Below are positions 27,488-63,993 of a stretch of 64,000 bases of DNA, piece after piece (the first letter of the stretch is position 1; each line of letters starts with the position of its first letter). The notes under the pieces were generated by a model, which was not told the DNA's origin, did no database searches, and saw only the letters and a list, made by a program, of their open reading frames with translations. Made by a program: the position numbers and the translations under genes. The stretch lies in the IMG/VR virus record IMGVR_UViG_3300036715_004471, positions 1 to 64,000 of that record, one strand, 5' to 3'.

Positions 27488-28882
27488 TCAGTAGATGATT
27501 TTGTTTTCGAACTTGTGACTGCCGAACTTTTCGTTGATGGTACGCCACACATTTTTACCATCACCCTCCGAATGCTCAATCCATTTTCCATTCATGGTCC
27601 AAGCAGTGGTCATGTCGCCAAGGTCATTTACCAAGGTGCCGATACCATTTTGGAAAACATCCCAGATGATATCTCTTGCTTTTGCCGGGGGAATGTCGCT
27701 TGACAGATCAGGCACGCCAGCAGCTGCACCGCCATTGCAAATTGGCCAAGCCGCCTGAAACAACTTCATCATGATATCTTTGTTTCTATTCATGATGGCG
27801 CGAGACTTATCAACATCCAAATCCATCATACAGGAAATGACTTCATCTTCGGATGTGTCCCAGAATTTTCCAAGATCCTTCTTACCCAGAATGACACACT
27901 TGCGCGCAAAATCATACACCAAGTTAGCAACCATCGGATGAATTAACCAGGAATTACTCAGAGCATGATATTCAAGCCCTGAACCAGTGACCTTGTAATC
28001 ACCGGGCAGGCTTCCCAGTTTGCTGTAATCTGGATGATTATATCCGTTCAGCAAAGACACGCACGCGCATCCAAGCGTAGCATCCAACACTTTGGTGATC
28101 GATGATGCTCTCTCATCTGAGAGCCCGCGGAAATCATAAAGATGAAATTGAATTGCTCCACGAGCGGTACGATATCTGATCGTTTTAGCATCAGGGCACC
28201 TCGAACTTGCGCTATCAATTCTCTTGATACCGTAAGCGTTCTTAATATCTGAACCAATTCCAAACGCAAGAGTCTGAACGTCAGCCTCCGCAAGCTGCTT
28301 GTCAGACAAAACCATTACTGATTTGTTGGAGATTCTTGCCTTGGGATCAACCTTTCGAGCCGAGGCATACATGTCATGCAGTCCAAATGCCATCGAATCA
28401 ATGGCGCGGGCGAGGCAAACACAAGAGGCGGTCTGAACTGCACCGCCAAATCCAATGCGAGATGCTGTCACCTTACCATCATAACCCGGAGACTTAACCT
28501 GATCTTTCGCAATGAGAAACGTAGCGGGGACGCAAGCGCCATTCTCATCCTCCAAAAAGAATTCTCCCATAGCGGCATTGTCACCGTTATGATCTAATTC
28601 ATTGTGAAGATTCGAAAATCTATGTTTATCCCTAGCAGCAACGTGTTCAACCATTTCAGAGTCATCAAGAACGGTCAAGGCGGCGTCGTCAACAAGATAG
28701 TTGGCATACGACGTACCATCGAGGTACGTTACTGTCACGTAAATTTCATCGTGACCGTAATCTTGAATGGACGTAACCAAAACGGTATCATGGGCAAACT
28801 TACCTTTGTTCGCCAGCTTGACACCAATGTTGCGACGATTCTTAACCCAATCGTTCACCAACTCACGTGCGTTCGTAATCAT
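27488..28882 (-). CDS. degenerate phiEco32-like COOH-NH2 ligase paralog
   Basis: Aligns by eye to 62749..63993 (NAYG, LDATLGCACVSL, LPGDYK, LEYHALSNSWL) but lacks several catalytic residues. Confidence 0.75.
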   Translation of the reverse strand: MITNARELVNDWVKNRRNIGVKLANKGKFAHDTVLVTSIQDYGHDEIYVTVTYLDGTSYANYLVDDAALTVLDDSEMVEHVAARDKHRFSNLHNELDHNGDNAAMGEFFLEDENGACVPATFLIAKDQVKSPGYDGKVTASRIGFGGAVQTASCVCLARAIDSMAFGLHDMYASARKVDPKARISNKSVMVLSDKQLAEADVQTLAFGIGSDIKNAYGIKRIDSASSRCPDAKTIRYRTARGAIQFHLYDFRGLSDERASSITKVLDATLGCACVSLLNGYNHPDYSKLGSLPGDYKVTGSGLEYHALSNSWLIHPMVANLVYDFARKCVILGKKDLGKFWDTSEDEVISCMMDLDVDKSRAIMNRNKDIMMKLFQAAWPICNGGAAAGVPDLSSDIPPAKARDIIWDVFQNGIGTLVNDLGDMTTAWTMNGKWIEHSEGDGKNVWRTINEKFGSHKFENKIIY

Positions 28883-29022
28883 GTTTTTGTTCCCTTACTT
28901 TCTGATGAAGATGGTTGTCTGATGGGAGGGTCCAGCCCTCCCCAGACTTTTCTATTCTGTGTTATGATCCTGACGCTTACGTCTTACTTAGATCTCGAGC
29001 CCCTGAGTCCCGGAATCTTTTG

Positions 29023-29049
29023 AGGGAAGCAAGCCGTGCTTGCTTCCCT
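29023..29049. other. 12-bp intergenic hairpin
   Basis: agggaagcaagc-cgt-gcttgcttccct. Confidence 0.55.
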
Positions 29050-29161
29050 GTACGTGAACATACATCTCACCAACTCTATCTCTCAGATCATTGATTTTTG
29101 TTCTGCGATATACTAACCTATCTCCCGGAAAGTAATCTCTTACTATGTCTCTTCGTTGCTA

Positions 29162-29650
29162 TCACTTCGCTGGCGTAGTAGCGCTAGCAGTCTTCTTCGA
29201 CTTGCGCTTGGCGCTCTTGGTCGCGGAACGCTCCGCAGCCACTCGCACCTTATTGCTCTCCGAACGGGAAGCGTCGCAAGCCCCAAGCTTGTTGGCAAAC
29301 CAGTTCTTAGCCAAGTCGCTGTCGTCACGTGCCAGGCGACGGGCAAACTCCTTGAGACTCAAACTGTTGTCACTCTTGGCGTGAAGAGCCTTGATAGAAC
29401 GAGAAACGGAAATCTTATCTTTGCTCATGATCTGTTCCTTTGCACTCGGGAGTTGATCCCGATTCAGATGTGGGTTTGACATCTCAACCATCCGAAATTC
29501 TCCGGTATAAATTGATGTCTTACAAATCCGACAATCACAATACTGATACTCTGTATTATAACGATCAGAAAACTTTTCACCTTCCCAGCGGAAGGTTTTG
29601 AATTCAGATGCGTGTGAACACGCGCGCCTCTCTAACGATGCTTCTGCCAT
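29162..29650 (-). CDS. basic hypothetical protein (possible internal start at 29428)
   Basis: K/A/S-rich C-terminus; AAAGGA before MSKDK. Confidence 0.6.
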   Translation of the reverse strand: MAEASLERRACSHASEFKTFRWEGEKFSDRYNTEYQYCDCRICKTSIYTGEFRMVEMSNPHLNRDQLPSAKEQIMSKDKISVSRSIKALHAKSDNSLSLKEFARRLARDDSDLAKNWFANKLGACDASRSESNKVRVAAERSATKSAKRKSKKTASATTPAK

Positions 29651-29662
29651 AAACTGATTCTC

Positions 29663-29860: not shown

Positions 29861-30004
29861 GACGATCCTTAAGAAAAATGTATTGTCTTGAGGATATGTT
29901 CCAAGAACATTTGGACGATGGGAAACCTGGCACTGACAGCTCCAACCAAGAAAAAGATTGCCATAGCAAACGGATAGTCCCGTTGGTGATCTTCCTTTTT
30001 AAGG

Positions 30005-30344: not shown

Positions 30345-30373
30345 TCATGGGCTCGGTCAAGCCGAGCCCATGA
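30345..30373. terminator. 12-bp hairpin downstream of the GATase gene
   Basis: tcatgggctcgg-tcaag-ccgagcccatga, followed by TCTTTT on the minus strand. Confidence 0.6.
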
Positions 30374-30400: not shown

Positions 30401-31414
30401 TCAGTCCATCTGACCATAATATCCGCGGTAATAAGCTGCAAGCTCTTCGTCATCCTCTACTTCGCTCTTGTCACCCTTCACCTCGGTCTTATCATCTTTC
30501 TTCCAAGATGAGGGGTAAGGAGAGTATGCTCCAGAACCAGTGGTACAGCTGCCACCGTAGCTATCGCCAGGAACTTTGGTTTCCACTACCGCCTCTTCGT
30601 CAATCTCATCATTAGCGGGTTTGACAGTCACGACGGTAGAGGTAGAGGAAGAATGATCGGTCCGGCTCTTGGTGTACTTGTTGTAGTAACCAACCTGGAT
30701 TCCACTCAGCTTGGTCTTGAACACACCATCGGCACGAATGCGATACACTCTGCCAATCTCATCGATCTTGAACTCACGATCGACTTCCAGGTCTGCAACC
30801 TTGAGCGCCTCGCGCACAATCTTCCAGGTAGAACCCCATACCACGCCGCCACCCTTGACCGAAACTACGCAGATATCAGAATGCTGCGAGAGACGGCACA
30901 GGTTGACATAGCCGCGATGATCAGTGTCGATCCAAGTAACTACGCCGTAACCCACCATCTCGCGGATGCCATCGTAGTTCTTATCAGCCAAGAGTTCGAA
31001 AATCTCCTGACTATCGACATTGATGTCTCGACCATTCTGCTTGGCAGACTTGAAAGCATCCGGAACCATCCCGTTATGGGCGCCCCACATGACCACCCTC
31101 CCGCCGCGACGAATCGCAAACGGATGTGCGTTCATAGGATCTTCACGACTACCACACGTAGCGAAACGTGCGTGCATCAAGCAGACGTCTCCAGCAGCGC
31201 CTTCAACGAAACGAACTCTTGCTCGGAGCCACGTTCCCTTCTTGCGTGCATACTTGACATCATCAGCTTCGCCATCCTTAGTGGAGAAAGTGACGCTGGC
31301 ATAACCGCAGCTATGCCCACCGCGACCGTCGATGCCATCCCCGAGACCGAGGATGAGCATCAACTTATCTTCCGCCGCAATGTCCAATCCGATGTATCCA
31401 GACAATCCACACAT
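30401..31414 (-). CDS. class II (Ntn) glutamine amidotransferase
   Basis: N-terminal MCG, RGGHSCG, HARFAT, AHPF, HNG, VDSQ. Confidence 0.9.
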   Translation of the reverse strand: MCGLSGYIGLDIAAEDKLMLILGLGDGIDGRGGHSCGYASVTFSTKDGEADDVKYARKKGTWLRARVRFVEGAAGDVCLMHARFATCGSREDPMNAHPFAIRRGGRVVMWGAHNGMVPDAFKSAKQNGRDINVDSQEIFELLADKNYDGIREMVGYGVVTWIDTDHRGYVNLCRLSQHSDICVVSVKGGGVVWGSTWKIVREALKVADLEVDREFKIDEIGRVYRIRADGVFKTKLSGIQVGYYNKYTKSRTDHSSSTSTVVTVKPANDEIDEEAVVETKVPGDSYGGSCTTGSGAYSPYPSSWKKDDKTEVKGDKSEVEDDEELAAYYRGYYGQMD

Positions 31415-31416: not shown

Positions 31417-33477
31417 TTAGTACACGTACTTTCCGCCCTTGAGGCTAATGAGGCGCTGAGCGAGTCCATTTCTTCTCGACGTCTCGTGACGCCATTCTTT
31501 CACTCTTGACATGATCCACGGCGCAAGCTCGGGAGCCACGTTCTGACAAAGGATCCTGAGCGGAGACTTCGGCAGATTTTCCAGATCCTTATCGGTAGAC
31601 TTGGCTGCCCAATCCACCAACCTCACCATCAACTTCGCCCAATTGATAACGCGCTGGGCGTCAGTCGTATTGGGATGAATTCTGAACTCCACCGTAGTGT
31701 CCGGCGCGATAGTTCTCTTGTTGACGATAAGAAAACGACCAGGAACAAGCTTGGCGCCCTGTTTGGTCTTATTCCATCTCATCAGGGCTGCCACCGAAAC
31801 ACCATGGCGCTGTGCGATCTTCTCTAGCGAATCGCCATTCAAGATGGGAACATTGACCGGGGTTCTCGGTCTCGGACCACGCCCCGCCAACCACGGAAGG
31901 ATGTTGAGACCCTTGCGACGGCAGTAGGGATGGTTATCAGCACGACGACCAGGCTTTTCTTTCTGGGCATCTTTACCGAAACCGGGAGACATGTTGACCT
32001 CACTCTTGCGACCCTCACGAGTCAAAGTGGTGAAGGCAACAGACATGATGGCATCCTTCTTATCAGTTCGTTCCAGGGCAGCAGCATATTCTTTGCCGAT
32101 CGGCACAGCGTATCTGTTACCCAAGCGCTCCTGTCCTGCAATCAGGTACAGGATGGGCTCGACCTTCGAGTAGACCGTCAAGAAGCGAAACATGTCCGCC
32201 CATTGAAGATCCTTGGCGTCCACGTGAGTGTGAATCGAACAACGATTGTCAACTCGGACTCGGCTCTTCTCGAACACCTTGCCCAAAGATTCAATACACT
32301 TGACCAGATAATCGCCAGCCACGGGAGCGGTAACCGCCTCGTAACCGCACGAATCATCACGATGAAGGTCGCTCAACCACCGTCTACACCAGTGATCAAC
32401 GTATCGGTTAGTGGAAAGCGAATTGTACTCCCACTCAATACCAGCGAATCGGTTGCAGTCGAACTGCTTACGTTCCGTCTTTTTGAAAGCGGGGAACGTC
32501 TTGCCGAACGGACCATTCGTTCGAGCAGCGACACAAGAGCAATGATCCAGACAGTTGTGGCAGTCTTCACACTCCTGCATCTCCTGGCAACCGGCGCTGG
32601 GACAAAGCACACACGCGCAGCAACCAGAACATCTCCAACAGTAACGGCACACTCTTTCCTGATGAGAGTTGCACGAATGGCAATGAAAGTGCGGGTTGCC
32701 GGGGCGACCAGTACCAACAGTGGCTCCCAATCTGCAACACTCTCCGCAGAATCCGCACGCAGAAACTTCATGCGACTTGGGCACGCCAGCACCAGCCGGA
32801 ACAATCGGATAGGTACAGTGAGGACAATGTGAGTGGGACTCGAATCCCACCATCGCATTACAATCCACACACCATCGGTAAGTGTAGTTCGAGGCATTGG
32901 TATGAGTGCCAACGTAATCTCGGAGCCCCGCCTTATCAATGTCGGTAGCAGAAGGATCGTTGTCGATCACCTGCAATGCGCTGAAAGCGTTATCTCGATT
33001 GGACAGGTCAGGAAAGTATCTGTCCGTGAGAGCAGGATAACGTCTCACCAACTGATCGTAATTCATATCTCGTCTCGGTTCGGGTTCCCTTGGTTGATTC
33101 ATTCCAGGCACATCATGTGCTAGAATCCTTCTCGCCGCTTCTTGAAAATCTTCGAGGCTGATGGGCGTCGGCGGTGGGTAAGCAGGTACAGCCCTCGCAA
33201 AGGGATTAGCTTCCACCACCGGTGCTTGAGCAATAGGCTGAGGTTCTGCAAAGAAATTGCGCCTCCACTCATTTAGCGGATTAACACGTCGAGCGCCGTC
33301 CGCAACAGCCCGCATTCGATTGCGAAATGCCTCAAGCCGAATCTGCGCATCGTGCAGTTGCTCGTGCTCTCGCTCTCGCACGAATTGGTAATTGTCTACC
33401 TCGATCTCATCGAAGATCCTTCGATCTTCTTCAATCGTCAATTCCTCCGCCCCAATTGTATCTTCTTTGTTCAACAA
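31417..33477 (-). CDS. amidoligase (GS/GCS-like) with Cys-rich region and inserted LysM domain
   Basis: GIEWE, YEAVTAP, CSIHTHVD, TVEFRIH; LysM GDSLEKIAQRHGVSVAALMRWN; start uncertain. Confidence 0.85.
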   Translation of the reverse strand: MLNKEDTIGAEELTIEEDRRIFDEIEVDNYQFVREREHEQLHDAQIRLEAFRNRMRAVADGARRVNPLNEWRRNFFAEPQPIAQAPVVEANPFARAVPAYPPPTPISLEDFQEAARRILAHDVPGMNQPREPEPRRDMNYDQLVRRYPALTDRYFPDLSNRDNAFSALQVIDNDPSATDIDKAGLRDYVGTHTNASNYTYRWCVDCNAMVGFESHSHCPHCTYPIVPAGAGVPKSHEVSACGFCGECCRLGATVGTGRPGNPHFHCHSCNSHQERVCRYCWRCSGCCACVLCPSAGCQEMQECEDCHNCLDHCSCVAARTNGPFGKTFPAFKKTERKQFDCNRFAGIEWEYNSLSTNRYVDHWCRRWLSDLHRDDSCGYEAVTAPVAGDYLVKCIESLGKVFEKSRVRVDNRCSIHTHVDAKDLQWADMFRFLTVYSKVEPILYLIAGQERLGNRYAVPIGKEYAAALERTDKKDAIMSVAFTTLTREGRKSEVNMSPGFGKDAQKEKPGRRADNHPYCRRKGLNILPWLAGRGPRPRTPVNVPILNGDSLEKIAQRHGVSVAALMRWNKTKQGAKLVPGRFLIVNKRTIAPDTTVEFRIHPNTTDAQRVINWAKLMVRLVDWAAKSTDKDLENLPKSPLRILCQNVAPELAPWIMSRVKEWRHETSRRNGLAQRLISLKGGKYVY

Positions 33478-33627: not shown

Positions 33628-34368
33628 TTAGAGGCTCAGAAAAGCCTGAGCGTATCTGGTAGCCGTAGTTTCGCAAAGTCCCGGAGCAGTGTTGACCTCC
33701 AAGACCCACATTCTGTTGGAACGGGTATTGGCAACGATATCGACTGCTCCGAAGAGCAAGCCGAGAGCCTGAACTGCTCTCACGCCAAGATCACGAAGAC
33801 CCTGCGGCTCAACGATTCCATTGCGACAGAACACCCACTGATTGTCGATGTTCCTAATCAAACCATCAGGTCTGGAACCATCGGCGTTACGCGCACCGTT
33901 GCGGCGACGCTTCTCCTGCAAGTCAATGACGACACCATTACAGGCATGAACTCGGAACTCCTTGTCCTTCTCAACCAGCTTCACATACAAAGGAGCCTCG
34001 ACGATGGGAAGCTGGCGGCAGATCACAATTCCACGACCCTCGGAGCCATTGAGAATCTGTCGAGCTACCACCACGATACCACTGCGAACCCACCCCTCTG
34101 CAACAGCCTTGGAGGTAGTGTACTCCGGAATCGAAACGCCCGCCGTAGACAGCTTGTTGAGAGTACTGAGCTTGTTCTTAGCGATGGCGATCCCCGCCGC
34201 CGGCTGAAGATTCACCAGAGGAACGTTGGCGTTCCCCCAAAGAATGTTTCGATGATCGTAACTCGCATCACCAGAAACAACCCTCTTGCCACTGATCTCA
34301 GTCATCTTCGCAGCAAGGAGCTTGGCTCCCTCACTGGTCTTCTTGTACGGAACGATTCGATAAGCCAT
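33628..34368 (-). CDS. phiEco32-like ATP-grasp ligase
   Basis: NKL, GSEGRGI, EFRVH, FGAVDI, VLEVNTAPG. Confidence 0.9.
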   Translation of the reverse strand: MAYRIVPYKKTSEGAKLLAAKMTEISGKRVVSGDASYDHRNILWGNANVPLVNLQPAAGIAIAKNKLSTLNKLSTAGVSIPEYTTSKAVAEGWVRSGIVVVARQILNGSEGRGIVICRQLPIVEAPLYVKLVEKDKEFRVHACNGVVIDLQEKRRRNGARNADGSRPDGLIRNIDNQWVFCRNGIVEPQGLRDLGVRAVQALGLLFGAVDIVANTRSNRMWVLEVNTAPGLCETTATRYAQAFLSL

Positions 34369-35192: not shown

Positions 35193-36101
35193 TCAATTTC
35201 CAGTTTTGTGTGGCTTGACCACTCCAGACGCCAGACCGATCTGAAACCGTTCCCAATAGTTACTAGGATACAATTTCAAACAGTCCAAAGCATTTTCGTA
35301 AGCGAATGCTCTCCACCATCCAGAAGAAATGCTGGTGCATACTTTGGAAAGTGAAAGCCGCCATGCTTTCTCAGGCGTCATCTTCCCGGGATGGGGAACC
35401 AGACTTCGTTCAATCGCAAGTACCGCAGACTCTTCCACTACGGAATAGAGCTGAATCTCGCGGGGACAAGCGAAGAACTTGTTCTTATCACAGAGGACTT
35501 CGGCACCATCTTTTTGAAAGTAAGTATAAGCCGGACGATCCGCCAACGCAACAGTGGCATGAATCGAATCATGATCGTAAACGTATCCCACACCATCCTC
35601 ACTGAAGAAGTCTGCTTTGCCGACATTCAGTTTAGGATGATTATAGGTATAAGTTTCCTTCTCACGCATCTTATGAAACTCCTCGAACTCCGGACGAACC
35701 TTGGCTCCTACCATCTTCATCAGATGATAATCAGAAAGGTTCTTCCAGAAATGAGGAGAGTTCCTCAGATACTTGTGAGAGGACTTGATAGTGAACAGCA
35801 TGTCCAGGCTAGGAACCAACCCGAACGGCGTGCTCATGGTATCAGGATCTTCCACAACCAGTTGGAGCAGAAGTTCGGAACTTCTGCTGGGATTAATCAA
35901 CTCAAACTCACAGTTGACTGCCCCGCGCACCACTCGTTTGGTGGGCGTAATCTTAATGTTGATGGGACCAACCCGACCGGACTGTTCAAGGATCCAGCTG
36001 CTGTATTCTGCTTCGGTGCAAACCCAATCGAAGTCCTTGGGCTCACGATGAAGAAGAAATGGTGCCCGAAACTTCAAAGCTCTGCTTCCGATCAGGATCA
36101 C
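35193..36101 (-). CDS. phage protein with polymerase-beta-like nucleotidyltransferase N-terminus
   Basis: LIGSRAL..PKDFDW (GS..DxD); IKSSH, YDHDSIH, SGWWRAF; GTG start after GGAG. Confidence 0.65.
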   Translation of the reverse strand: MILIGSRALKFRAPFLLHREPKDFDWVCTEAEYSSWILEQSGRVGPINIKITPTKRVVRGAVNCEFELINPSRSSELLLQLVVEDPDTMSTPFGLVPSLDMLFTIKSSHKYLRNSPHFWKNLSDYHLMKMVGAKVRPEFEEFHKMREKETYTYNHPKLNVGKADFFSEDGVGYVYDHDSIHATVALADRPAYTYFQKDGAEVLCDKNKFFACPREIQLYSVVEESAVLAIERSLVPHPGKMTPEKAWRLSLSKVCTSISSGWWRAFAYENALDCLKLYPSNYWERFQIGLASGVVKPHKTGN

Positions 36102-36705
36102 GACAACTTTTCTCCATTTGGAATGCGTGGATTTTCTCAACCCATACTAAAAAATCATGTACTGATCTAGTCAGTTTTGCTTTGTTACAATCTTCGCAAG
36201 ATGGGACAACGTTATCCCTATCATGGTTTAATAGACTATTTATTCTATCTAATCCATTATAGATGAAATCTCCATCTTGAATCCTTTGTTTTGAGAACCT
36301 GCTGTTAGCATATTTATACGCATTGTACGTATTTTTAGGCTCATCTCCACAATAGAAACATTTTTCTTGCGATAACACTACAAATTCTTCAAATGATAAG
36401 TTGCCATCTGAATATCTGTCAGTGAAAATCTTTTTGGCTGAACCTAATCTTGGCTGCAAGCCGGGACGGGCTCGCTGCGCCTTCTTTAGGTTAATTTTAA
36501 CTGACTCTACATTAAGACACCCACAACTCTTGGTTTTGCCCGTCTTAACATAGGATAGCCTTATATTTAAGACCGTTCCACAATCGCAAACACATTCAGA
36601 CAAAACATGACCATCATTTGTACGAGAGGTCAGAATTTTCTGTATTGTAAGACGATTGAATTGTTTTCCTATTAGTTCTCGTGCCGATTTTATATGCCTA
36701 TTCAT
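36043..36705 (-). CDS. HNH-type homing endonuclease (related to 1529..2083)
   Basis: FNRLT..CDCG..SCGCL; CFYCG; NGLDRINS..NVVPSCEDCNKAK. Confidence 0.85.
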   Translation of the reverse strand: MNRHIKSARELIGKQFNRLTIQKILTSRTNDGHVLSECVCDCGTVLNIRLSYVKTGKTKSCGCLNVESVKINLKKAQRARPGLQPRLGSAKKIFTDRYSDGNLSFEEFVVLSQEKCFYCGDEPKNTYNAYKYANSRFSKQRIQDGDFIYNGLDRINSLLNHDRDNVVPSCEDCNKAKLTRSVHDFLVWVEKIHAFQMEKSCRDPDRKQSFEVSGTISSSS

Positions 36706-39409: not shown

Positions 39410-39963
39410 GTATCTTCTCCTTCGGAAAGTAGGGGGTGTGCTTCGTACTCGGAACCCAGAGAAACGACAGAGAAGTCTACCAGATTTTGGGTTCTTCTGT
39501 TTCTAAATCTGTAAACATCCAACCACCCATTTCGTTGCAGAACCTTGTTCTGCGCACTATTAGTGGTTACATGCGTACAGAAAAGAACAGTGTAGCCTCT
39601 ATCTCTGGCGATAGCTCTTCTAAACTTGCCAAGGATAGTGCCAACACCTTTGTTGCGGTAATGGGAGAAAACTTTCTCTCCAGTCGACATGCAAACGCCA
39701 CAGCATCCGCGCAACTGACAAAGAACAAACTCCGCGATTTCCGCCTTGGTATCGGCGTCACGAATAACGAAACCAGCCCCCTCTTCAGACTCGATGAATC
39801 TGGTGTTTCGATTATTCAGCGGCTCCAGATTGTCGAAGCGCTTTGAAGGAGTGATCAAGATCTCCACACGATTGATCTTCAGAGTGCGTCGAATCTCTTC
39901 ACAACACTCTTTCGCGTATGCGGGAACCTGAGTGAGTCTAGCCCAAATACTGTCGTTACTCAT
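39322..39963 (-). CDS. GNAT-fold acetyltransferase
   Basis: VFSHYRNKGVGT (motif A), N..Q..VLQRNGW; paralog of 59172..59960. Confidence 0.75.
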   Translation of the reverse strand: MSNDSIWARLTQVPAYAKECCEEIRRTLKINRVEILITPSKRFDNLEPLNNRNTRFIESEEGAGFVIRDADTKAEIAEFVLCQLRGCCGVCMSTGEKVFSHYRNKGVGTILGKFRRAIARDRGYTVLFCTHVTTNSAQNKVLQRNGWLDVYRFRNRRTQNLVDFSVVSLGSEYEAHPLLSEGEDTCLSIESLSWKLASSNRRTSWYSWLFTPP

Positions 39964-40609
39964 GTTTTTCCTTAGCAGCATCTTGCGCCGTATGTACTGC
40001 ACGGATCAGATCCACTTGACTCCTCAAAACAAACATGATGTTACGATACACATCGTATTGTCGAGGGTGCTTCTTACGAGCCGACTTCAACATCGGCAAA
40101 ATTCGGTTGGTGGTTTCTTCCAGATATCCATCCTGCTTATCTCTGGAAAAGACAGGGACGATGGTACTCTGGTTGTGGATTCTATCTGACCCCTTGACTA
40201 CCGAAGAAATGGGATCATCTTCCATATCAAGGAAGTAGACTTCTGGATCAATCTTACGACCACGATGGGTCTTGGTGACCAACTCAGTGGCGCGCGAGAT
40301 TCGAGTGCTGAATCTTGAATCCAATTCCTTGAAACCAACATCGTAATCTTCCGGGCAATCATGCAAGAAAGATACGGCAATGGTTTCTTCCGGAAACATC
40401 AGACCACTAGAGAGTGTCAGAAGATATCCAGCAATCTCAATCTGATGGTAAAACTCCGGGGTGATCTTGTCTTTTCTGGTCCCCTTATGAAAACCAAGAG
40501 CGAACTCCATGGCTTCCAATGCAGTGAACCAACCTTTGCCCAAGAGAGTGTGTCTAACGGCGATGGTGTGTCTCTGGTATCTGTCCAGAATAACTTCTGC
40601 TGATTCCAT
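39956..40609 (-). CDS. HD-domain (p)ppGpp hydrolase-like protein (SpoT-HD/Mesh1 type)
   Basis: H.GTRKD..PEFYH, LHDCPED, VTK, VKGSDRIHN. Confidence 0.85.
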   Translation of the reverse strand: MESAEVILDRYQRHTIAVRHTLLGKGWFTALEAMEFALGFHKGTRKDKITPEFYHQIEIAGYLLTLSSGLMFPEETIAVSFLHDCPEDYDVGFKELDSRFSTRISRATELVTKTHRGRKIDPEVYFLDMEDDPISSVVKGSDRIHNQSTIVPVFSRDKQDGYLEETTNRILPMLKSARKKHPRQYDVYRNIMFVLRSQVDLIRAVHTAQDAAKEKHE

Positions 40610-40642: not shown

Positions 40643-41644
40643 TTACTTCTTCATCTGACTGAGATACCAACCGCGAGCTTTATCGCCGACTGGTTTCTGA
40701 ACCTGCTTCCAATCCAATCCAGAAGCCTCAAGCTCATCTTGGTTTTCCTTCTGAACATCCGTAGCAATCCAGCCAAGGAACTTGCCAATGAGCTTCTGAT
40801 TGAAAGTCAGAGAACCATCATCAGAAACCGCCCGAGCCCCCTGCTCCAAACGCGCCATAGTCAGCACCATACCAGCAAACAGATTGGCATTCTCAGCCGA
40901 TTCTGCATTGACCTGAGCAGCAACCTTTGCCTTGACAACACGATGGGCTTCACCCTTCGCCTTAAAAACAAGGTTGCAATAGTTGGCATAACCAAGATGT
41001 TCGACAGAAGTTGGATAGAAAACCAATCCTTCTCCAGTGCCCTTGATACCGAAAGTAGAATCTACCCACGGATCATTCTGCTCTACCGCCATAACCCATT
41101 CGTTGATCAACGAAGTTTTCGCAGATAGAGTCTCATCACTAGCCGACCAGTCTACTTGGATTGGATCGTTATGCCATGGCAGAATATGAATGCCAAGCTC
41201 CGAAGCAACTGGCGACAAAAGATCAGCCAAATGAGTAGGCTCAGAAATAAGAACGCCGTCTTCCGTATTCAGAGAGCGAGCAGCAAACAAAGCAAAAACC
41301 TTATCATTAAGCTGCTCAAGTGCAACTCCGCTTTGAATACCCTTGCCGCACCACTCGCCATACAGGATAAAACCATTGGCATTAGAAGCTAGAAGGGGAG
41401 CCTTGATTGTCTCGACCCACTTAGCAAAACCTTTATTATCTTTTTCAGGAGTAAGAACAACGCCTCTACTCTGACAAACGATACTTCCATCGTTATGAAT
41501 TTGAATTGCATGATTCTCTCCATGCAACTTAACCTTACCACGATAGGTAACGATCGGATAGCCGTTCAAAATATCAGGAACAGAAACAGCATACTTTCTG
41601 ATATTATGGAAGCCTTCGATTTCGGTCCAGGGAATGACAGCCAT
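40643..41644 (-). CDS. ATP-dependent RNA ligase (Rnl2-like)
   Basis: KLHGEN, QSR, YGEWCG, GEGLV, FKAK. Confidence 0.85.
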   Translation of the reverse strand: MAVIPWTEIEGFHNIRKYAVSVPDILNGYPIVTYRGKVKLHGENHAIQIHNDGSIVCQSRGVVLTPEKDNKGFAKWVETIKAPLLASNANGFILYGEWCGKGIQSGVALEQLNDKVFALFAARSLNTEDGVLISEPTHLADLLSPVASELGIHILPWHNDPIQVDWSASDETLSAKTSLINEWVMAVEQNDPWVDSTFGIKGTGEGLVFYPTSVEHLGYANYCNLVFKAKGEAHRVVKAKVAAQVNAESAENANLFAGMVLTMARLEQGARAVSDDGSLTFNQKLIGKFLGWIATDVQKENQDELEASGLDWKQVQKPVGDKARGWYLSQMKK

Positions 41645-44405: not shown

Positions 44406-45116
44406 TCACCAAGCATTCATCAAACGCGGACCAGGCTGCGAGGTGCAATTGATAGCACCATTCGCAACCGTGTAGATCGCGCCAACCTCTTCCATTGGAA
44501 GATATTCTTCAGGAGTCAGGTTTGCATGTTCACAAGCAAACTTCAGAATAGAAGGCGTGGAAGCGTACACTACTCCACCCTCCTTCATAGTTGCTCCAAA
44601 GATTTCAGAGTCACCAGTCAGTCGGCAAATCTTGATCTCGTTCAGATTAGATGCCTCGACCCAAGTGATGACACCCCAGCCGCTCATCTTGGCAAGCTCT
44701 GCCAACTGATTGTCAGCCATCAGATGAAACACTTCCTGAGAGTCAACCGTGATGGCTCGACCATTGTGACGAGCACTAAACCAAGCGTCGTCGAACATTC
44801 CATTGTGAGAACCCCACAAAACTGTTGCGCCATTCCTTTCAATAGGGAACGGATGCACATCAGTCTCTACAGAAGAGATGGGTCCTCTGGAGTGCATCAT
44901 ACAGCTCTCCATGGAAGAGGCTGCATCCATGAAATCACGTTCCACGGCACGCCAGCTACGAATGTCACGTCGGAAACCCATGCCGCCATTACCATCCAGG
45001 TTGACATAACCAGAGCCACCCATACCTCTAGTCACAATGGCGTGACCAAGAGCAGCAGTCAGGATCAAACGAGTCTCGGGATCAGAAATATTACTGTATC
45101 CGCTCAAACCACACAT
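44406..45116 (-). CDS. class II glutamine amidotransferase, second copy
   Basis: MCGLSGY, HSRG, VHPF, HNG, VDSQ; paralog of 30401..31414. Confidence 0.88.
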   Translation of the reverse strand: MCGLSGYSNISDPETRLILTAALGHAIVTRGMGGSGYVNLDGNGGMGFRRDIRSWRAVERDFMDAASSMESCMMHSRGPISSVETDVHPFPIERNGATVLWGSHNGMFDDAWFSARHNGRAITVDSQEVFHLMADNQLAELAKMSGWGVITWVEASNLNEIKICRLTGDSEIFGATMKEGGVVYASTPSILKFACEHANLTPEEYLPMEEVGAIYTVANGAINCTSQPGPRLMNAW

Positions 45117-46273: not shown

Positions 46274-46645
46274 TCAAATGAGCGATGATGCAGTACCAGC
46301 ATACTCGATCCAATCACCCGACTCAACCAAGTCATTGTTGCTGGTATCGTGATGAAAGATATAAGCTTCTACCTCCACTCCATCACCCACCTCGATAGAC
46401 GTGCGCACGTACAAATGCGGATGACCCTCAACCCTGTCAAGGTATTTCTTGGTATCATCGGAGACTTCATAGACCTCTCCAAGAACCGCAGTCTTGCCAC
46501 CAGGACAGAGAGCGGGGAAAGCGCCCAAAGAACGAAGGCTGTACTCGGGCTTGGTTCGGCACGTCTCAACGTACTCAGAATCAGCCAGCGCACCATGCAG
46601 GGGTCCGCCCATACGGAGCGAACCGTAAACAAAAATCTTCGACAT
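46274..46645 (-). CDS. gamma-glutamylcyclotransferase (GGCT/AIG2-like)
   Basis: IFVYGSLR, GEVY, LDRVEG, YVR, SGDW. Confidence 0.92.
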   Translation of the reverse strand: MSKIFVYGSLRMGGPLHGALADSEYVETCRTKPEYSLRSLGAFPALCPGGKTAVLGEVYEVSDDTKKYLDRVEGHPHLYVRTSIEVGDGVEVEAYIFHHDTSNNDLVESGDWIEYAGTASSLI

Positions 46646-55085: not shown

Positions 55086-56105
55086 TTAAATTCCGTTGGG
55101 CGTATAAGAGAAGATGATGTCTCTCTTACCGTTCGGGTTAACGAAGGCGCAAACCAAACGTTTGAAGTCTTCCTCATTACCCATGTCGACAATCTTGCCG
55201 TCACAGATGAGCTTCCAGACATTAACCTCACGCAGAACATCCATCTTCGACACAACCAAGTGAGTTACGTCGTTCACATCACAAGCACGAGCCAGCGACG
55301 TGAGATCCAGATAATTGCACTGTCTCGGTCTACCAGTAGTAGCACCGAACTCTCCACCCACCTTGCGCAGAAGAGGAAGAATCTCATCACCCTCCGTCTC
55401 GAACTTTTTGGCACCAACATAAGTATCGTATGCCTTGCAGGCACCATACACCATGTCGATGGCAGTGTGGGGAACACCATTGATGATGGCTCCGCCAACA
55501 CCACAGTGAGAGCTGGTAACGTATGGATAGTCACCGAAGATGGGATCCAGATAATGCCCTTGAGCACCTTCCAGAATTAGGTTAGTCTCACCCTTGGACT
55601 CATCGAAAATCTCATCGACGAAATCAATCAGGTAGCCAGCCAGTCTCGGCTCATGCTCAGCACGAATGCCGGTACGATTGTACTTGTCACGATACGCCGG
55701 ACCAATACCACGCTTGGTAGTACCAATCTTCGTATCGGTAGCATCTTCCATGAGATGCGCATCAGTCACGATGTGAGCATTGCGTGCAATCTTGACCAGG
55801 GAAGTATCCACTCCCAGAGCAGCCAAATCAGCAAGCTCGCTGAAGAACTGGTCGGGATTCACCACACAACCAGGACCAACAATCGACTTTACACCGAACA
55901 AGACTCCAGAAGGAATGAGATGGGTCACAACCTTCTGACCATTGTGGTAGATGGTATGACCAGCATTGGCGCCGCCATTGAACCTCACCGCATGGGTGTA
56001 CTGCACTTCATTGGGAGCTTTTGCAGCCTCCCCCAAGAGGTGATGGGAAATCTTCCCCTTGGCGCAATCGCCGTATCTCACGTCAATGACGATATCTGCT
56101 CTCAT
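55086..56105 (-). CDS. purA: adenylosuccinate synthetase (short form)
   Basis: YGDCAKGK, GGANAGHT, GTTKRGIGPAY, EGAQG, YPYVTSS, TTGRPR, SKMD. Confidence 0.92.
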   Translation of the reverse strand: MRADIVIDVRYGDCAKGKISHHLLGEAAKAPNEVQYTHAVRFNGGANAGHTIYHNGQKVVTHLIPSGVLFGVKSIVGPGCVVNPDQFFSELADLAALGVDTSLVKIARNAHIVTDAHLMEDATDTKIGTTKRGIGPAYRDKYNRTGIRAEHEPRLAGYLIDFVDEIFDESKGETNLILEGAQGHYLDPIFGDYPYVTSSHCGVGGAIINGVPHTAIDMVYGACKAYDTYVGAKKFETEGDEILPLLRKVGGEFGATTGRPRQCNYLDLTSLARACDVNDVTHLVVSKMDVLREVNVWKLICDGKIVDMGNEEDFKRLVCAFVNPNGKRDIIFSYTPNGI

Positions 56106-60593: not shown

Positions 60594-60699
60594 ACAATGA
60601 AACTCAACCTCCATAAAACTGGCTCACGTAGATAGAATGCTTTTAAGGCATTACCTATGAACCAACAAGCATATTGTTAATCTCGCAAAAATCTTAGCA

Positions 60700-60780
60700 T
60701 CGCTTGTGTGGACTCGAACCACATAGCCTAAGCACCTCACTTAAAATGCGAGGCGACTCTCCCAGGAGTCAAACAAACGA
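60700..60780 (-). tRNA. embedded atypical tRNA-like element (UUU loop)
   Basis: TCGTTTG/CAAGCGA, GACTC/GAGTC, CCTCGC-ATTTTAA-GTGAGG, TGTGG-TTCGAGT-CCACA. Confidence 0.6.
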
Positions 60781-61262: not shown

Positions 61263-61283
61263 GATGATTGTTCCTTGTGAGGG

Positions 61284-61556: not shown

Positions 61557-61629
61557 TTAGAATCCTTACTCGTCGAGTGCTTAAGGCGCTCACGAATCAA
61601 CGGAGGAAGAAGAAGATGCCACTGATTCG

Positions 61630-62685
61630 TCAATCAATGTCATACCACATACCGTAGCGCGTCATGCACTCGATACGAACCAGCGAATCAGTCATTCCAT
61701 CCGGATCATGTCCACCATCGCGGAGTTTGATTCTCAGCGAAATCATGGGCACATTCGAGATGTGAATCATACTCTTGCCAGTCTGGGTATTCTTGACGAC
61801 GGGTTTGCTTTCATCAGCCGTCTGAGCATTGGCGGCATTGCGCTGCCTCATCCTCTCGCGCCACTGTTCCGCAGCACCGGACGGATCACCATTCTGAGTA
61901 GGAGAAAGCGGCTGACCCGCAGGGACGTACTTCCACTTCTGGGTAACAGGATCCCAAAGACGAGCACCATACTCACTGACAAACTCTCCGGGTTTACCAT
62001 TGAGAGATTCCGCAAGAGCCTTGCGACGAGCCTCCGCCTCCTCCTTGCCCTTCTTCATCTTATCGAGAAACTGGCGCTTGCGCTCAGCCACTCGGGGACG
62101 TTCGGCTCTCTTCCATTCCGCCCAATCACCAGAAGGAATGACCTCCTCACGATAAGGAATCTTCCAGCGATTCAGAATGTAACAGTGAGCACGAGTACCA
62201 TCCTCAAGCGAGATAATCCGGCGCGCCGTGCTGCTCGGACAATCCTCAACCGCATTGTCGAGCCATTCGATGGTGCGATTCTTCACCACATAAAGCTCGC
62301 CAACGATGGCGGTCTCGCCACCATCAATGATGGCGGGTACCTCATCGTTCATGTTGATCATCTTGAACTGAGGCAAAGTTTTGGTGGCACCAACGAAGCC
62401 CTTGTCACGGGCGACCGCCACGTTGAGGCGAAAGCCGGAACGGCAAACGCCGAACACGAACAAGTTGTTCGTTCTTTCGACTTCTTTGGGCTCAAGCCTG
62501 GCGTTTGGGGGCATTTGTGTCTCCGGATTTCTCACTGGACCAATCCCGGGTTGAGTATCCTCACCATCCCAAGATAGATCGAACGTTGTCTGTTGATGTC
62601 CAGGACGATCCGGCTCCGTTGATGGGGGAGGCGGAACGCGCAAAAGACCTTCATGACCTTGATATTGTTGGCTTTGCCAAGCCAT
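61630..62685 (-). CDS. protein with divergent GGCT/AIG2-like domain and long extensions
   Basis: LFVFGVCR, GELY, WLD, IPSGDW. Confidence 0.7.
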   Translation of the reverse strand: MAWQSQQYQGHEGLLRVPPPPSTEPDRPGHQQTTFDLSWDGEDTQPGIGPVRNPETQMPPNARLEPKEVERTNNLFVFGVCRSGFRLNVAVARDKGFVGATKTLPQFKMINMNDEVPAIIDGGETAIVGELYVVKNRTIEWLDNAVEDCPSSTARRIISLEDGTRAHCYILNRWKIPYREEVIPSGDWAEWKRAERPRVAERKRQFLDKMKKGKEEAEARRKALAESLNGKPGEFVSEYGARLWDPVTQKWKYVPAGQPLSPTQNGDPSGAAEQWRERMRQRNAANAQTADESKPVVKNTQTGKSMIHISNVPMISLRIKLRDGGHDPDGMTDSLVRIECMTRYGMWYDID

Positions 62686-62699
62686 ATGATTCCTCTAAC

Positions 62700-62739
62700 T
62701 GGAATGCCCTCGCCACCTTCCGGTGGCGAGGGCATTCCA
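62700..62739. terminator. perfect 18-bp hairpin (GGAA loop on minus strand)
   Basis: tggaatgccctcgccacc-ttcc-ggtggcgagggcattcca. Confidence 0.65.
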
Positions 62740-62748
62740 ATGATTGTT

Positions 62749-63993
62749 TCAGATCTTCTTGCCCAGACGAAGAGCGACAATCGCGCTGCTCACCTTGGCG
62801 TTGGGACTGGCGTTGCCGCATCTCCAGGCTTCGAGAGAGCCGTCCTTGGCATCGAGATACCAGTTACGAGCGAGGTTATCGGGCTCCGCGAGAGCGGTCT
62901 CCATGCCATTGGCGAAGATGTTGTACAGGAGTTCCAGATCCTGCGCCGATGCCCAGGAGTAGTGACTCTGATAACAAGCAGCCAGGAGCTTGATGAAAAC
63001 CTCCTTGTTCTTCTCCAGACTCGCACGCGCAGCCGCGACATCGCAGTTGACGATGGTCTGAATCGTCTCCTCCTCAGTCGCCTGCCACAGATCCATCCAG
63101 CCCTTCTGACCGAGAATCACCACCTTGCGAGCTACATCGATCACCAGGTTCATGATGAACGGATGCGACAACCACGCATTGGAAAGCGGACGGTACTCGA
63201 TACCGTGAGGCGGGAGGCGGTACTCACCGGGAAGACCGTAGAAGATGCGACGCTTCTTTGCGTCGAACTTCGCGAAGAGCGACACGCACGCAACACCAAG
63301 GATGGTATCCAGAGCCTTGACGACAGGCACAGCCTTCTCCTCGGAAGTTTTACCCACTCCGAAGTGCAAGTGACCTCCGGCGCTGCGGAAGGGAACCTCT
63401 CGTCCAGGCGGGAGCTGCGTCTTGATGCCGTAAGCGTTGAGGCTCGGCATACAACCGAAGGCGACATGCTCATCAGCAGCCTCCATCAGCATCTCATGCG
63501 GAATATCGAAGACGCTCTTGATCGCGAGCTTCGCACCGGGGAAGCGCTTGCGCGCGGCATCGTAGACACCACGAAGACCAGCCGCAACCGAATCGGTATG
63601 CACCTCGTTGCAACCAGCCGCAAGCGTCGTGAACTCCGCTTGGAAGCCATCCCAGTACATCTTCTGGGGAGTCGGTCCAGCACCACCACGCGAGCCGTAC
63701 TGCTGGAGAGCGGAGGTGACATCCTTACCATCCTTGCTATCGAGGAAGAGGAAGGCAGGAATCATCTTGCCATCCGCATCCGTCACGAAAATCTCCGGAT
63801 CGGAGCCAATCGTGAAGCCGTAAGCCAGGTTCGTGGGAAGAGAGAGAAGTTTCAGCTTGCTCTTCAGCTCCGGAGGCGTCGACTCACAATCAAACTCATC
63901 GTTCAGATTGAAGTAGGTCACGAACGACGTACCAGTCTCCGTGCAGATGCAGCGAAGGCTGGCATAGTCCATGGTGACGCTCGCCTGCGTCAC
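62749..63993 (-). CDS. phiEco32-like COOH-NH2 ligase type 2 (may extend beyond window)
   Basis: GSDPEIF, DGFQAEF, FGCMP, RSAGGHLHFG, RRIFYG.PGEYR, GIEYRPLSN. Confidence 0.9.
   Translation of the reverse strand: MTQASVTMDYASLRCICTETGTSFVTYFNLNDEFDCESTPPELKSKLKLLSLPTNLAYGFTIGSDPEIFVTDADGKMIPAFLFLDSKDGKDVTSALQQYGSRGGAGPTPQKMYWDGFQAEFTTLAAGCNEVHTDSVAAGLRGVYDAARKRFPGAKLAIKSVFDIPHEMLMEAADEHVAFGCMPSLNAYGIKTQLPPGREVPFRSAGGHLHFGVGKTSEEKAVPVVKALDTILGVACVSLFAKFDAKKRRIFYGLPGEYRLPPHGIEYRPLSNAWLSHPFIMNLVIDVARKVVILGQKGWMDLWQATEEETIQTIVNCDVAAARASLEKNKEVFIKLLAACYQSHYSWASAQDLELLYNIFANGMETALAEPDNLARNWYLDAKDGSLEAWRCGNASPNAKVSSAIVALRLGKKI

What the first reader, a model, noticed from the sequence alone, without database searches (positions are those of the whole stretch)
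27488..63993. Expanded, duplicated phiEco32-type peptide-ligase system
Seen: COOH-NH2 ligase (62749) next to a GGCT-fold protein (61630); ATP-grasp, amidoligase and GATase-II operon (34368-30401); second GATase-II (44406) near a second GGCT (46274); and a degenerate ligase paralog (27488). Known: this gene set was described computationally in phiEco32-like phages and proposed to make peptide modifications, possibly of the cell wall; I know of no established product. Here most components are doubled and spread over 36 kb.
Basis: partly seen in the sequence, partly recalled or inferred. Interest (0 to 1): 0.72.

Follow-up and report, generated by a model that had tools for sequence, protein, structure and literature searches.

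The report
Expanded phage amide-ligase gene set
A 446-kb uncultured "megaphage" carries an enlarged, split-up but conserved version of a peptide/amide-ligase gene set already known by prediction from about 300 small phages; its product is still unknown, and one enzyme here carries a cell-wall-binding (LysM) insert that makes the old cell-wall hypothesis easier to test.

Summary
A ninth gene, a third COOH-NH2 ligase, lies just past the window end. Genome-wide there are 3 COOH-NH2 ligases (one with a degenerate active site), 1 Amidoligase_2, 2 class-II glutamine amidotransferases, 2 GGACT cyclotransferases and 1 RimK-like ATP-grasp. All sit within 27.5-66.4 kb of a 446.5-kb phage genome.

The same genes lie in the same order, spread over 36-40 kb, in two related megaphages at 38-78% protein identity. 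The split layout is therefore old and retained. The three ligases arose by duplication inside this lineage.

Features specific to this clade:
- Long-form ligases with an extra N-terminal beta domain.
- A 351-aa GGACT protein.
- A 686-aa amidoligase with a Cys-rich zinc-type region and an inserted LysM domain.

The product remains unknown. My best guess is a glutamate/glutamine-derived amide adduct built and trimmed on a peptidoglycan-derived acceptor.

Verdict: a new variant of a known, predicted kind, of moderate interest.

Separately, the whole region lies in a 126-kb GC gradient (0.65 to 0.34) that is conserved in the clade and unexplained.

The parts
27488..28882 (-). lig27: divergent COOH-NH2 ligase paralog (464 aa), probably catalytically altered or inactive
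   Evidence: PHROG 3815 at 2.1e-6. 458 bits against the long-form ligase profile. Keeps 58 of 97 conserved columns; His267, His269, Glu179, Arg307/308 and Arg327 are replaced. The G001 ortholog (48% identical) shares the loss of both His. Forms its own long-stemmed clade inside the megaphage ligase clade.
30345..30373 (-). Terminator-like hairpin (12 pairs, 8 G-C, T-rich tail) 28 nt after the GAT30 stop codon
   Evidence: Strongest minus-strand hit of the scan. The total number of hits in the region is not above the shuffles, so this is only a hint that grasp-amidoligase-GATase is one transcription unit.
30401..31414 (-). GAT30: class-II (Ntn) glutamine amidotransferase, 337 aa; domain at aa 1-245 followed by a low-complexity tail
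   Evidence: GATase_6 at 29.9 bits, cut-off 27. PHROG 14519 at 3.7e-14. Starts MCGLSGY. Cys2, Arg83, Asn114-Gly115 and Asp134 are invariant. Its start lies 2 nt after the amidoligase stop.
31417..33477 (-). amid31: 686-aa amidoligase. Variable N-terminus; conserved region from about aa 136; Cys/His-rich segment at about aa 212-316; glutamine-synthetase-fold core at aa ~340-686 with a LysM insert at aa 547-585 (nt 31723-31839)
   Evidence: Amidoligase_2 at 8.2e-11 and LysM at 7e-9. The LysM part also matches the MltD model. Only 17 long homologs were found, 11 of them with LysM; about 20 Cys are invariant. In the model the core has pLDDT 80-95, and the best fold matches are YbdK, glutamine synthetase and Dop.
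33628..34368 (-). grasp33: RimK-like ATP-grasp ligase (246 aa), single copy
   Evidence: PHROG 2599 at 3.6e-59. Sub-threshold RimK family, MptN and LysX matches. Weak Ddl and RimK matches in the PDB. 313 phage records hold homologs at up to 42% identity. 76-78% identical in G001 and G002.
44406..45116 (-). GAT44: second class-II glutamine amidotransferase (236 aa)
   Evidence: No Pfam hit; weak PHROG hit at 7e-5. Starts MCGLSGY, keeps all invariant catalytic and Gln-binding columns, and scores 315 bits against the family profile. Falls in a different subclade from GAT30.
46274..46645 (-). GGCT46: short GGACT/AIG2-like gamma-glutamyl(amine) cyclotransferase (123 aa)
   Evidence: GGACT at 9.2e-24. 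PHROG 2520 at 6.3e-22. Has the YGSL motif and the Glu of the LDxxEG motif. 153 phage records hold homologs, often next to the ATP-grasp gene.
61630..62685 (-). GGCT61: long GGACT protein (351 aa). N-terminal DTQPGIGP motif, GGACT domain at aa 75-189, basic linker, conserved ~45-aa C-terminal domain
   Evidence: GGACT at 4.4e-12. Only 5 word-based homologs, one of them the window's own protein. Orthologs sit directly after the ligases in G001, G002 and L014. Alignment.
62700..62739 (.). Perfect 18-bp-stem palindromic hairpin in the 63-nt spacer between lig62 and GGCT61
   Evidence: Its role (attenuator, processing site or terminator) was not tested.
62749..64000 (-). lig62: long-form COOH-NH2 ligase type 2. 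The gene runs to 64170 (473 aa) and is cut by the window end. A tandem paralog, lig64, lies at 64720-66195, outside the window
   Evidence: PF14395 at 47.6 bits. PHROG 3815 at 8.6e-31. lig64: PF14395 at 55.3 bits. AlphaFold model with pLDDT 93.6, a glutamine synthetase/YbdK fold and an extra N-terminal beta domain. At least 498 long-form homologs.

Best explanation
This is a lineage-specific, expanded and physically split version of the phage amidoligase cassette first predicted in phiEco32-like phages. It is carried by a clade of about 430-466-kb uncultured megaphages.

Shown:
- Nine intact genes from five enzyme families lie in three same-strand clusters. The first is lig64-lig62-GGCT61. The second is GGCT46 and GAT44. 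The third is grasp33-amid31-GAT30, with lig27 1.5 kb downstream.
- The set and its order are conserved in three genomes.
- The three COOH-NH2 ligases arose by duplication within the lineage, and one of them lost its conserved histidines.
- Both amidotransferases keep the catalytic Cys and the glutamine-binding residues.
- The amidoligase carries an inserted LysM domain.

Inferred mechanism:
- Up to four active ATP-dependent carboxylate-amine ligases form successive amide bonds: an ATP-grasp of the RimK alpha-L-glutamate-ligase type and three glutamine-synthetase-fold enzymes (the amidoligase, lig62 and lig64).
- The bonds most likely involve glutamate or glutamine.
- The translationally coupled amidoligase and GAT30 would act together as a glutamine-dependent amidating unit, or GAT30 would act as a gamma-glutamyl hydrolase.
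- The two GGACT enzymes would remove gamma-glutamyl groups as 5-oxoproline. That would be a write, edit and deprotect scheme.
- Because LysM binds GlcNAc-containing glycans, the most likely acceptor is a peptidoglycan precursor or muropeptide. The outcome would then be a modified cell wall during infection.

The identity of the system is well supported. The acceptor and the product are not.
For: - Families.
- Catalytic residues of both GATases.
- Glutamine-synthetase/YbdK fold of the ligase and the amidoligase. The matches include gamma-glutamyl-amine synthetases.
- Conserved order of all nine genes in G001 and G002.
- In-lineage duplication of the ligases.
- Co-occurrence as one operon in small phages.
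- A 2-nt gap between amid31 and GAT30; the amidoligase-then-GATase order is kept in many distant phages.
- LysM at 7e-9, present in 11 of 17 long homologs.
- Terminator-like hairpin after GAT30.
- From my own knowledge, not tested here: gamma-glutamyl protect-and-deprotect chemistry by an ATP-grasp plus a GGCT-fold enzyme in butirosin synthesis (BtrJ/BtrG), and glutamine-dependent amidation of peptidoglycan stem peptides (MurT/GatD, LtsA).
Against: - No biochemical data exist for any member.
- amid31 has no signal peptide (sequence), so LysM would have to bind a cytoplasmic ligand. That is unusual for LysM.
- LysM is absent from the canonical small-phage amidoligases and from 6 of the 17 long homologs, so it cannot define the ancestral acceptor.
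- About 45 unrelated genes separate the clusters: RNA ligase, a SpoT-like HD hydrolase, a PurA-like protein, an NTPase. The clusters may therefore work independently.
- One 121-kb phage has a long-form ligase but no ATP-grasp anywhere in its record.
- The presumed catalytic Glu of the long GGACT protein is Met in the L014 ortholog.
Confidence: 0.55

Rival explanations
1. The three clusters are independent modules, not one pathway. These would be a ligase/GGACT writer-eraser pair (lig64, lig62, GGCT61), a GGACT/GATase pair (GGCT46, GAT44) and the grasp-amidoligase-GATase operon. Each would act on its own substrate.
For: The clusters are 10-16 kb apart. They are separated by unrelated genes, and this separation is conserved in three genomes. 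GAT30 and GAT44 fall in different subclades. A 121-kb phage keeps a long-form ligase without any ATP-grasp. There is a terminator-like hairpin after GAT30.
Against: In about 20 of 21 smaller phage loci, and in cultured phages, the same families sit in one same-strand operon. Every copy of every family in the 446-kb genome lies in one 39-kb stretch.
Confidence: 0.22
2. The enzymes modify proteins rather than the cell wall. They would add peptide or poly-glutamate tags to host or phage proteins, in the way RimK modifies ribosomal protein S6 or PafA/Dop handle Pup, in order to redirect host physiology.
For: The ATP-grasp is closest to RimK-family alpha-L-glutamate ligases. The amidoligase fold matches include Dop. 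The long-form ligases and the amidoligase carry extra N-terminal domains and a Cys-rich region that could recognise macromolecules. Protein targets have been proposed for related phage ATP-grasp ligases (PMC4431377).
Against: All RimK-type matches are far below the family cut-offs. LysM points to a glycan ligand. No tag-like small ORF or target was identified.
Confidence: 0.15
3. The set modifies nucleotides, tRNA or phage DNA, for example by adding an amino acid to a base. This would fit the nucleotide and RNA-repair genes around it.
For: The neighbours include a PurA-like enzyme, an NTPase_I-T protein, an HD hydrolase, an RNA ligase and RtcB.
Against: None of these neighbours is part of the cassette in small phages. 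The PurA-like protein is not PurZ: 90 bits against a 300-bit cut-off. No base-modification hallmark enzyme was seen next to the ligases.
Confidence: 0.06
4. The extra copies are decaying leftovers of duplication with no function.
For: lig27 has lost conserved active-site residues.
Against: All nine ORFs are intact and retained in the same order in three genomes that differ by 25-60% at the protein level. The C-terminal half of lig27 is well conserved between orthologs.
Confidence: 0.02

Closest known systems
phiEco32-type phage amidoligase cassette (Iyer, Abhiman, Burroughs and Aravind 2009, as cited in PMC10580990). Examples: Escherichia phage IME267, Alcaligenes phage vB_Af_QDWS535, LUZ24-like Pseudomonas phages
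   Same: The same five families: PF14395 ligase, PF12224 amidoligase, class-II GATase, RimK-like ATP-grasp, and often a GGACT protein. All are on one strand, the amidoligase-then-GATase order is kept, and the context is a phage genome.
   Different: - The canonical set is a single 4-8-kb operon with one copy of each gene and a short (254-268 aa) ligase.
- Here there are three long-form (464-491 aa) ligases, one of them degenerate, two GATases and two GGACT proteins, one of them 351 aa.
- The amidoligase is 686 aa and carries a Cys-rich region and LysM.
- The ATP-grasp gene lies upstream instead of downstream.
- Everything is spread over 39 kb.
Glutamine synthetase / YbdK (GCS2) carboxylate-amine ligases, including gamma-glutamyl-amine synthetases
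   Same: Both lig62 and amid31 have this fold (Foldseek probability about 1.0). By family knowledge the expected chemistry is an ATP-dependent acyl-phosphate intermediate.
   Different: TM-scores are only 0.3-0.45 and identity is 8-14%. No sequence-level match to any solved structure. The substrates are unknown.
Butirosin BtrJ/BtrG logic: an ATP-grasp gamma-glutamylates an amine and a GGCT-fold enzyme later removes the group (from my own knowledge)
   Same: An ATP-grasp ligase is found together with GGACT/GGCT-fold proteins. The two are often adjacent in small phages.
   Different: No carrier protein and no aminoglycoside genes are present. The resemblance is in logic only and was not tested.
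Glutamine-dependent amidation of peptidoglycan stem peptides: MurT/GatD and the AsnB-like LtsA (from my own knowledge)
   Same: A carboxylate-activating ligase is paired with a glutaminase. Here the ligase also has a peptidoglycan-binding LysM domain.
   Different: MurT has a Mur-ligase fold and GatD is a class-I GATase. Here the pair is a glutamine-synthetase-fold ligase and a class-II Ntn GATase. There is no homology.
RimK, the ribosomal protein S6 alpha-L-glutamate ligase
   Same: It is the nearest named ATP-grasp family.
   Different: The scores are far below the family cut-offs (36.6 bits against 143), and the protein is about 50 residues shorter than RimK.

Membership tests
phiEco32-type phage amidoligase cassette | COOH-NH2 ligase type 2 (PF14395) | tested here: met
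   lig62 scores 47.6 bits and lig64 55.3 bits against a cut-off of 25. There are three copies genome-wide.
phiEco32-type phage amidoligase cassette | Amidoligase_2 (PF12224) enzyme | tested here: met
   42.7 bits against a cut-off of 22. Single copy.
phiEco32-type phage amidoligase cassette | Class-II (Ntn) glutamine amidotransferase with an N-terminal catalytic Cys, placed directly after the amidoligase | tested here: met
   GATase_6 at 29.9 bits, cut-off 27. MCG start. Invariant C2, R83, N114-G115 and D134. A 2-nt gap after amid31. The same order is seen in QDWS535 and in many IMG/VR loci.
phiEco32-type phage amidoligase cassette | RimK-like ATP-grasp ligase | tested here: met
   PHROG 2599 at 3.6e-59. 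42% identical to the annotated ATP-grasp of QDWS535 by tblastn; 50% over the aligned part in the reverse search. No Pfam hit, and the NCBIfam matches are below cut-off.
phiEco32-type phage amidoligase cassette | GGACT/AIG2-like cyclotransferase (accessory; detected in about half as many phage records as the ligase) | tested here: met
   Two copies, 84.8 and 47.1 bits against a cut-off of 22.8. 153 phage records have a homolog, against about 300 with the ligase.
phiEco32-type phage amidoligase cassette | All components in one compact operon (within about 10 kb) | tested here: not met
   The components lie in three clusters over 38.7 kb, with about 45 other genes between them. The same split is found in G001 and G002. 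All genes are still on one strand.
phiEco32-type phage amidoligase cassette | Defined product or phenotype | not testable with these tools
   I found no paper that establishes one.
Glutamine-dependent two-component amidotransferase (amidoligase plus GATase) | A functional glutaminase site | tested here: met
   Cys2, Arg83, Asn114-Gly115 and Asp134 are invariant in 47 sequences, including GAT30 and GAT44. They correspond to the Cys1/Arg/Asn-Gly/Asp set of PurF- and GlmS-type enzymes (from my own knowledge).
Glutamine-dependent two-component amidotransferase (amidoligase plus GATase) | A physical complex with an ammonia channel between the two proteins | not testable with these tools
   No usable computational result was obtained (see Tried and rejected). 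It needs co-purification or a solved structure.
PurZ (2-aminoadenine genome pathway), considered for the neighbouring gene at 55086-56105 | A match to the PurZ model above its cut-off | tested here: not met
   The PurZ model gives 90 bits against a cut-off of 300, while the PurA model gives 258 bits. The best PDB matches are bacterial PurA.

The most novel reading that the evidence does not exclude
The cassette is one block of a ~126-kb, single-strand 'leading arm' of the genome. Base composition in this arm falls steadily from a sharp boundary: GC 0.65 to 0.34 here, 0.58 to 0.33 and 0.52 to 0.30 in two relatives. Orthologs keep their place in the arm while their GC3 differs by genome.

If this gradient reflects the order of entry or expression, early genes would be tuned to a GC-richer host before the phage's own tRNA arrays are expressed. 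If instead it reflects biased gene conversion spreading from a recombinogenic genome end, it would be a new kind of positional programme in phage genomes.

In the first case the expanded ligase set, with its LysM-bearing amidoligase, would be an early function that remodels the host envelope by acting on peptidoglycan precursors.
Probability: 0.15. Interest if true: 0.75.

Novelty: new variant of a known kind. Interest (0 to 1): 0.42.

Why it matters
The phiEco32-type ligase cassette has been annotated in hundreds of phages since 2009 without a known product. This megaphage clade adds three things.

- The set can be expanded and dispersed and still be retained gene for gene. That argues for real and probably layered function.
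- A conserved pseudo-ligase paralog exists, which may be a regulatory or scaffold subunit.
- The LysM domain built into the amidoligase gives the first sequence-level pointer to a peptidoglycan-type ligand, and it can be tested directly by binding assays.

In practice the cultured E. coli and Pseudomonas phages with the compact cassette remain the better experimental entry point. This variant mainly sharpens the hypothesis.

The conserved GC gradient around the cassette may interest phage genome biologists more than the cassette itself.

Tried and rejected
- Complex prediction of the amid31 core (aa 320-686) with the GAT30 domain (aa 1-245) gave no verdict: score 0.00 and the controls were not run. 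It is evidence neither for nor against binding.
- Nucleotide search of the region against cultured phages found no match.
- The amidoligase and GAT30 have almost no BLAST-level relatives among cultured phages. Profiles were needed to find them.
- Sequence search of the PDB with the ligase profile and with GAT30 gave only chance-level hits.
- PADLOC defence models gave no hits for any component.
- I looked for shared extra components. The 'hypothetical' genes inside the canonical cassettes (QDWS535 gp42; IME267 gp81, gp83, gp84) and the small ORFs beside the megaphage components share no PHROG family or BLAST hit.
- The PurZ / 2-aminoadenine reading of the PurA-like gene was rejected.
- Chimeric assembly or a recently acquired island as the cause of the high-GC region was rejected. 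Two independently assembled relatives show the same gradient with collinear orthologs.
- Amelioration of recently acquired genes is disfavoured for the same reason.
- TAG recoding: removing TAG as a stop does not merge ORFs more than removing the other stops does, so no alternative code is claimed.
- Repeats at the GC boundary: nothing notable.
- RNA runs: none was listed, so co-expression remains untested.
- The GATase tree does not resolve whether GAT30 and GAT44 come from an old duplication or from separate acquisitions (weak support and long branches).


Full report
**What the window is.** The window is the first 64 kb of a 446,541-bp virus record. The record carries a large terminase, a portal, a baseplate wedge protein, a family-B-type DNA polymerase and an SbcC-like nuclease, plus 56 tRNA genes. 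It is therefore a tailed 'megaphage'. It comes from a 465,767-bp JGI metagenome contig. The best-matching public run is a microbial mat metagenome, with partial matches in sediment and aquatic runs. Nearly all genes are on the minus strand.

**Checking the observation.** Pfam places five of them above the curated cut-offs:
- COOH-NH2_lig at 62749
- GGACT at 61630 and at 46274
- Amidoligase_2 plus LysM at 31417
- GATase_6 at 30401

The other three had no Pfam hit, but other evidence supports each.
- The ORF at 33628 matches the RimK-like ATP-grasp PHROG at 3.6e-59. It has sub-threshold RimK, MptN and LysX matches.
- The ORF at 44406 starts MCGLSGY exactly like GAT30. It keeps every invariant column of a 47-sequence alignment of this GATase family: Cys2, Arg83, Asn114-Gly115, Asp134.
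- The ORF at 27488 is a true but divergent ligase paralog. It matches PHROG 3815 at 2e-6 and scores 458 bits against a profile of long-form ligases.

The ligase at 62749 runs past the window end to 64170. A third ligase lies at 64720-66195. Profiles I built give these genome-wide copy numbers: three ligases, one amidoligase, two GGACT proteins, two GATases and one ATP-grasp. All lie between 27.5 and 66.4 kb.

**Is it one known kind of system?** Among cultured phages, 301 records carry a homolog of the ligase and 313 a homolog of the ATP-grasp. The host breakdown is nearly identical: Pseudomonas 119 and 120, Escherichia 92 and 94, Vibrio 20 and 22. A further 153 records carry a GGACT homolog, often beside the ATP-grasp gene.

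In Alcaligenes phage QDWS535 the order is ligase, hypothetical, amidoligase, GATase, ATP-grasp, all within 4.4 kb. A phiEco32-like phage has ligase, amidoligase and GATase within about 5 kb.

I scanned 26 IMG/VR loci with profiles. In my reading of that table, about 20 of the 21 non-megaphage loci with enough flank hold the ligase within 10 kb of a GATase and/or ATP-grasp on the same strand. An amidoligase (or a second, weakly scoring ligase-like gene) lies between them in most.

I found no paper that establishes a product. Authors still cite the 2009 prediction of cell-wall modification and superinfection exclusion.

**What is different here.**
- *Copy number and layout.* The nine genes form three clusters over 38.7 kb. 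They are separated by about 45 genes, including an RNA ligase, a SpoT/MESH1-like HD hydrolase, an NTPase_I-T protein and a PurA-like enzyme. This layout is not an accident of one assembly. Two related megaphages, G001 (451,956 bp, circular assembly) and G002 (432,844 bp), have all nine genes in the same order over 40 and 36 kb, at 38-78% protein identity. G002 has one extra ligase.
- *Ligase history.* A tree shows that the lig27, lig62 and lig64 types are each represented in the relatives and together form one clade (SH-aLRT 91). They therefore duplicated within this lineage before the genomes diverged.
- *The degenerate ligase.* lig27 sits on a long stem and keeps only 58 of 97 conserved columns. 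It has lost His267, His269, Glu179 and several Arg, and its G001 ortholog shares the loss of both His. It is a conserved, probably non-catalytic paralog.
- *The two GATases.* They fall in different subclades, so their history is not resolved.
- *Architecture.* The ligases are long forms of 464-491 aa, against 254-268 aa in small phages. The AlphaFold model (pLDDT 93.6) shows a glutamine synthetase/YbdK-type core preceded by a beta-rich N-terminal domain. At least 498 such long forms exist in metagenomes.
- *The long GGACT protein.* It is nearly confined to this clade.
- *The amidoligase.* It is 686 aa, with about 20 invariant Cys in a zinc-type region and a LysM domain inserted into the catalytic core. 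Only 17 long homologs were found, 11 of them with LysM.

**How it most likely works.** Some of this is shown: the families, the intact catalytic sites of both GATases, the glutamine-synthetase fold of the ligase and the amidoligase, the 2-nt spacing between amid31 and GAT30, and a strong hairpin just after GAT30.

The rest is inferred. There are up to four active ATP-dependent carboxylate-amine ligases, two glutaminases (or gamma-glutamyl hydrolases) and two gamma-glutamyl cyclotransferases. Together these are what one would need to build, amidate and trim a glutamate- or glutamine-derived amide adduct. This is similar in logic to gamma-glutamyl protecting-group chemistry and to glutamine-dependent amidation of peptidoglycan stem peptides; both comparisons come from my own knowledge.

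The LysM insert makes a peptidoglycan precursor or muropeptide the most likely acceptor. I hold this loosely, for three reasons:
- amid31 has no signal peptide.
- LysM is missing from the canonical enzymes.
- No assay exists for any member.

The rivals are independent modules, protein tagging and nucleic-acid modification. They are listed with their tests in the rival explanations.

**Membership and novelty.** All five family-level features of the phiEco32-type cassette are met. The compact-operon feature is not. I therefore file this as a new variant of a known, computationally predicted kind. It is neither categorically new nor merely another member.

**The surroundings.** The cassette sits inside a striking compositional gradient.
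- GC rises almost linearly from 0.34 at position 1 to about 0.65 at 123-125 kb (r = 0.88, about 0.017 per 10 kb). It then drops to 0.38 within 500 bp at 126.0 kb. The remaining 320 kb is 0.33-0.36.
- All three codon positions and the intergenic DNA follow the gradient.
- G001 and G002 show the same pattern with lower peaks of 0.58 and 0.52.
- The arm is largely collinear at the protein level between G000 and G001: 112 of the 262 ORFs called on 1-135 kb have a G001 match, mostly in conserved order. It has no long nucleotide matches, whereas the core is about 72% identical at the DNA level.
- Orthologs differ widely in GC3 between genomes. For lig64 the values are 0.70, 0.53 and 0.32.

This rules out a chimera or a recent island. 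It points to a position-dependent and genome-specific pressure.

In transcription order the arm is followed by the main tRNA arrays at 393-427 kb. This fits early genes being tuned to a GC-richer host. GC-biased gene conversion spreading from a genome end is an alternative. I could not decide between them.

The 'provirus' label of the record seems spurious. The DNA trimmed beyond its end encodes same-strand genes typical of huge phages, such as a class-I aminoacyl-tRNA synthetase, NUDIX hydrolases and a SpoU methylase.

**Verdict.** This is a new variant of a known kind and its mechanism is still inferred. Interest is moderate (0.42). The GC gradient deserves its own follow-up.

Noticed in passing
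window 1-64000, continuing to about 126,000 of the genome (L003-L006): GC content rises monotonically from 0.34 to about 0.65 over 126 kb and ends in a sharp drop (0.57 to 0.38 within 500 bp at 126.0 kb). It affects all codon positions and the intergenic DNA. Two related megaphages show the same gradient with lower peaks, and orthologs differ widely in GC3 between genomes. It is not a chimera or an island. The cause is unknown; host-codon tuning of early genes or biased gene conversion from a genome end are possibilities.
   Followed up: partly
window 15230-15303 (-); also genome 320811-320884 (-): There are two suppressor-type tRNAs with anticodon CTA, which reads TAG. TAG ends only 4 of 280 long frames in the low-GC core but 24 of 169 in the GC-gradient arm. 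Removing TAG as a stop does not merge ORFs unusually, so no recoding is shown.
   Followed up: partly
window 55086-56105 (-): A short (339 aa) adenylosuccinate-synthetase homolog, 76% identical in G001. It matches PurA models far better than the PurZ model, so it is not evidence for a 2-aminoadenine genome.
   Followed up: yes
window 39956-40609 (-): An HD-domain protein resembling the hydrolase domain of SpoT/RelA and MESH1. It may be a (p)ppGpp hydrolase.
   Followed up: partly
window 8543-10075 (-) and 40643-41644 (-): An RtcB-type tRNA-splicing ligase and a separate RNA ligase (PF09414). This suggests an RNA-repair capacity, possibly against host anticodon nucleases.
   Followed up: no
window 62700-62739: A perfect 18-bp-stem palindromic hairpin in the 63-nt spacer between the ligase and the long GGACT gene.
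   Followed up: no
window 35193-36140 (-): A protein with DUF7275 (3e-63) and DUF7277 domains lies just downstream of the ATP-grasp cluster's upstream neighbours. It had no match in G001.
   Followed up: no
genome end (446,541) and beyond, L065: The record is labelled 'provirus'. However, the 19 kb trimmed from the parent contig encodes same-strand genes typical of huge phages: an AAA ATPase, a Glu/Gln-tRNA synthetase-like protein, a SpoU methylase, NUDIX hydrolases and a TPM phosphatase. The trimming looks spurious and no host flank is evident.
   Followed up: partly
L006:1-6000 (genome 124,001-130,000): In the probable source run, contig word depth is about 13 on the high-GC side of the boundary and about 6 on the low-GC side. 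The other runs show smaller differences. This could be GC bias in sequencing or a terminal redundancy.
   Followed up: no
window 10546-10632, 20285-20370, 60699-60780 (all -): tRNA-Leu(TAA) x2 and tRNA-Lys(TTT) lie inside the GC-gradient arm. Both decode A/T-ending codons.
   Followed up: no
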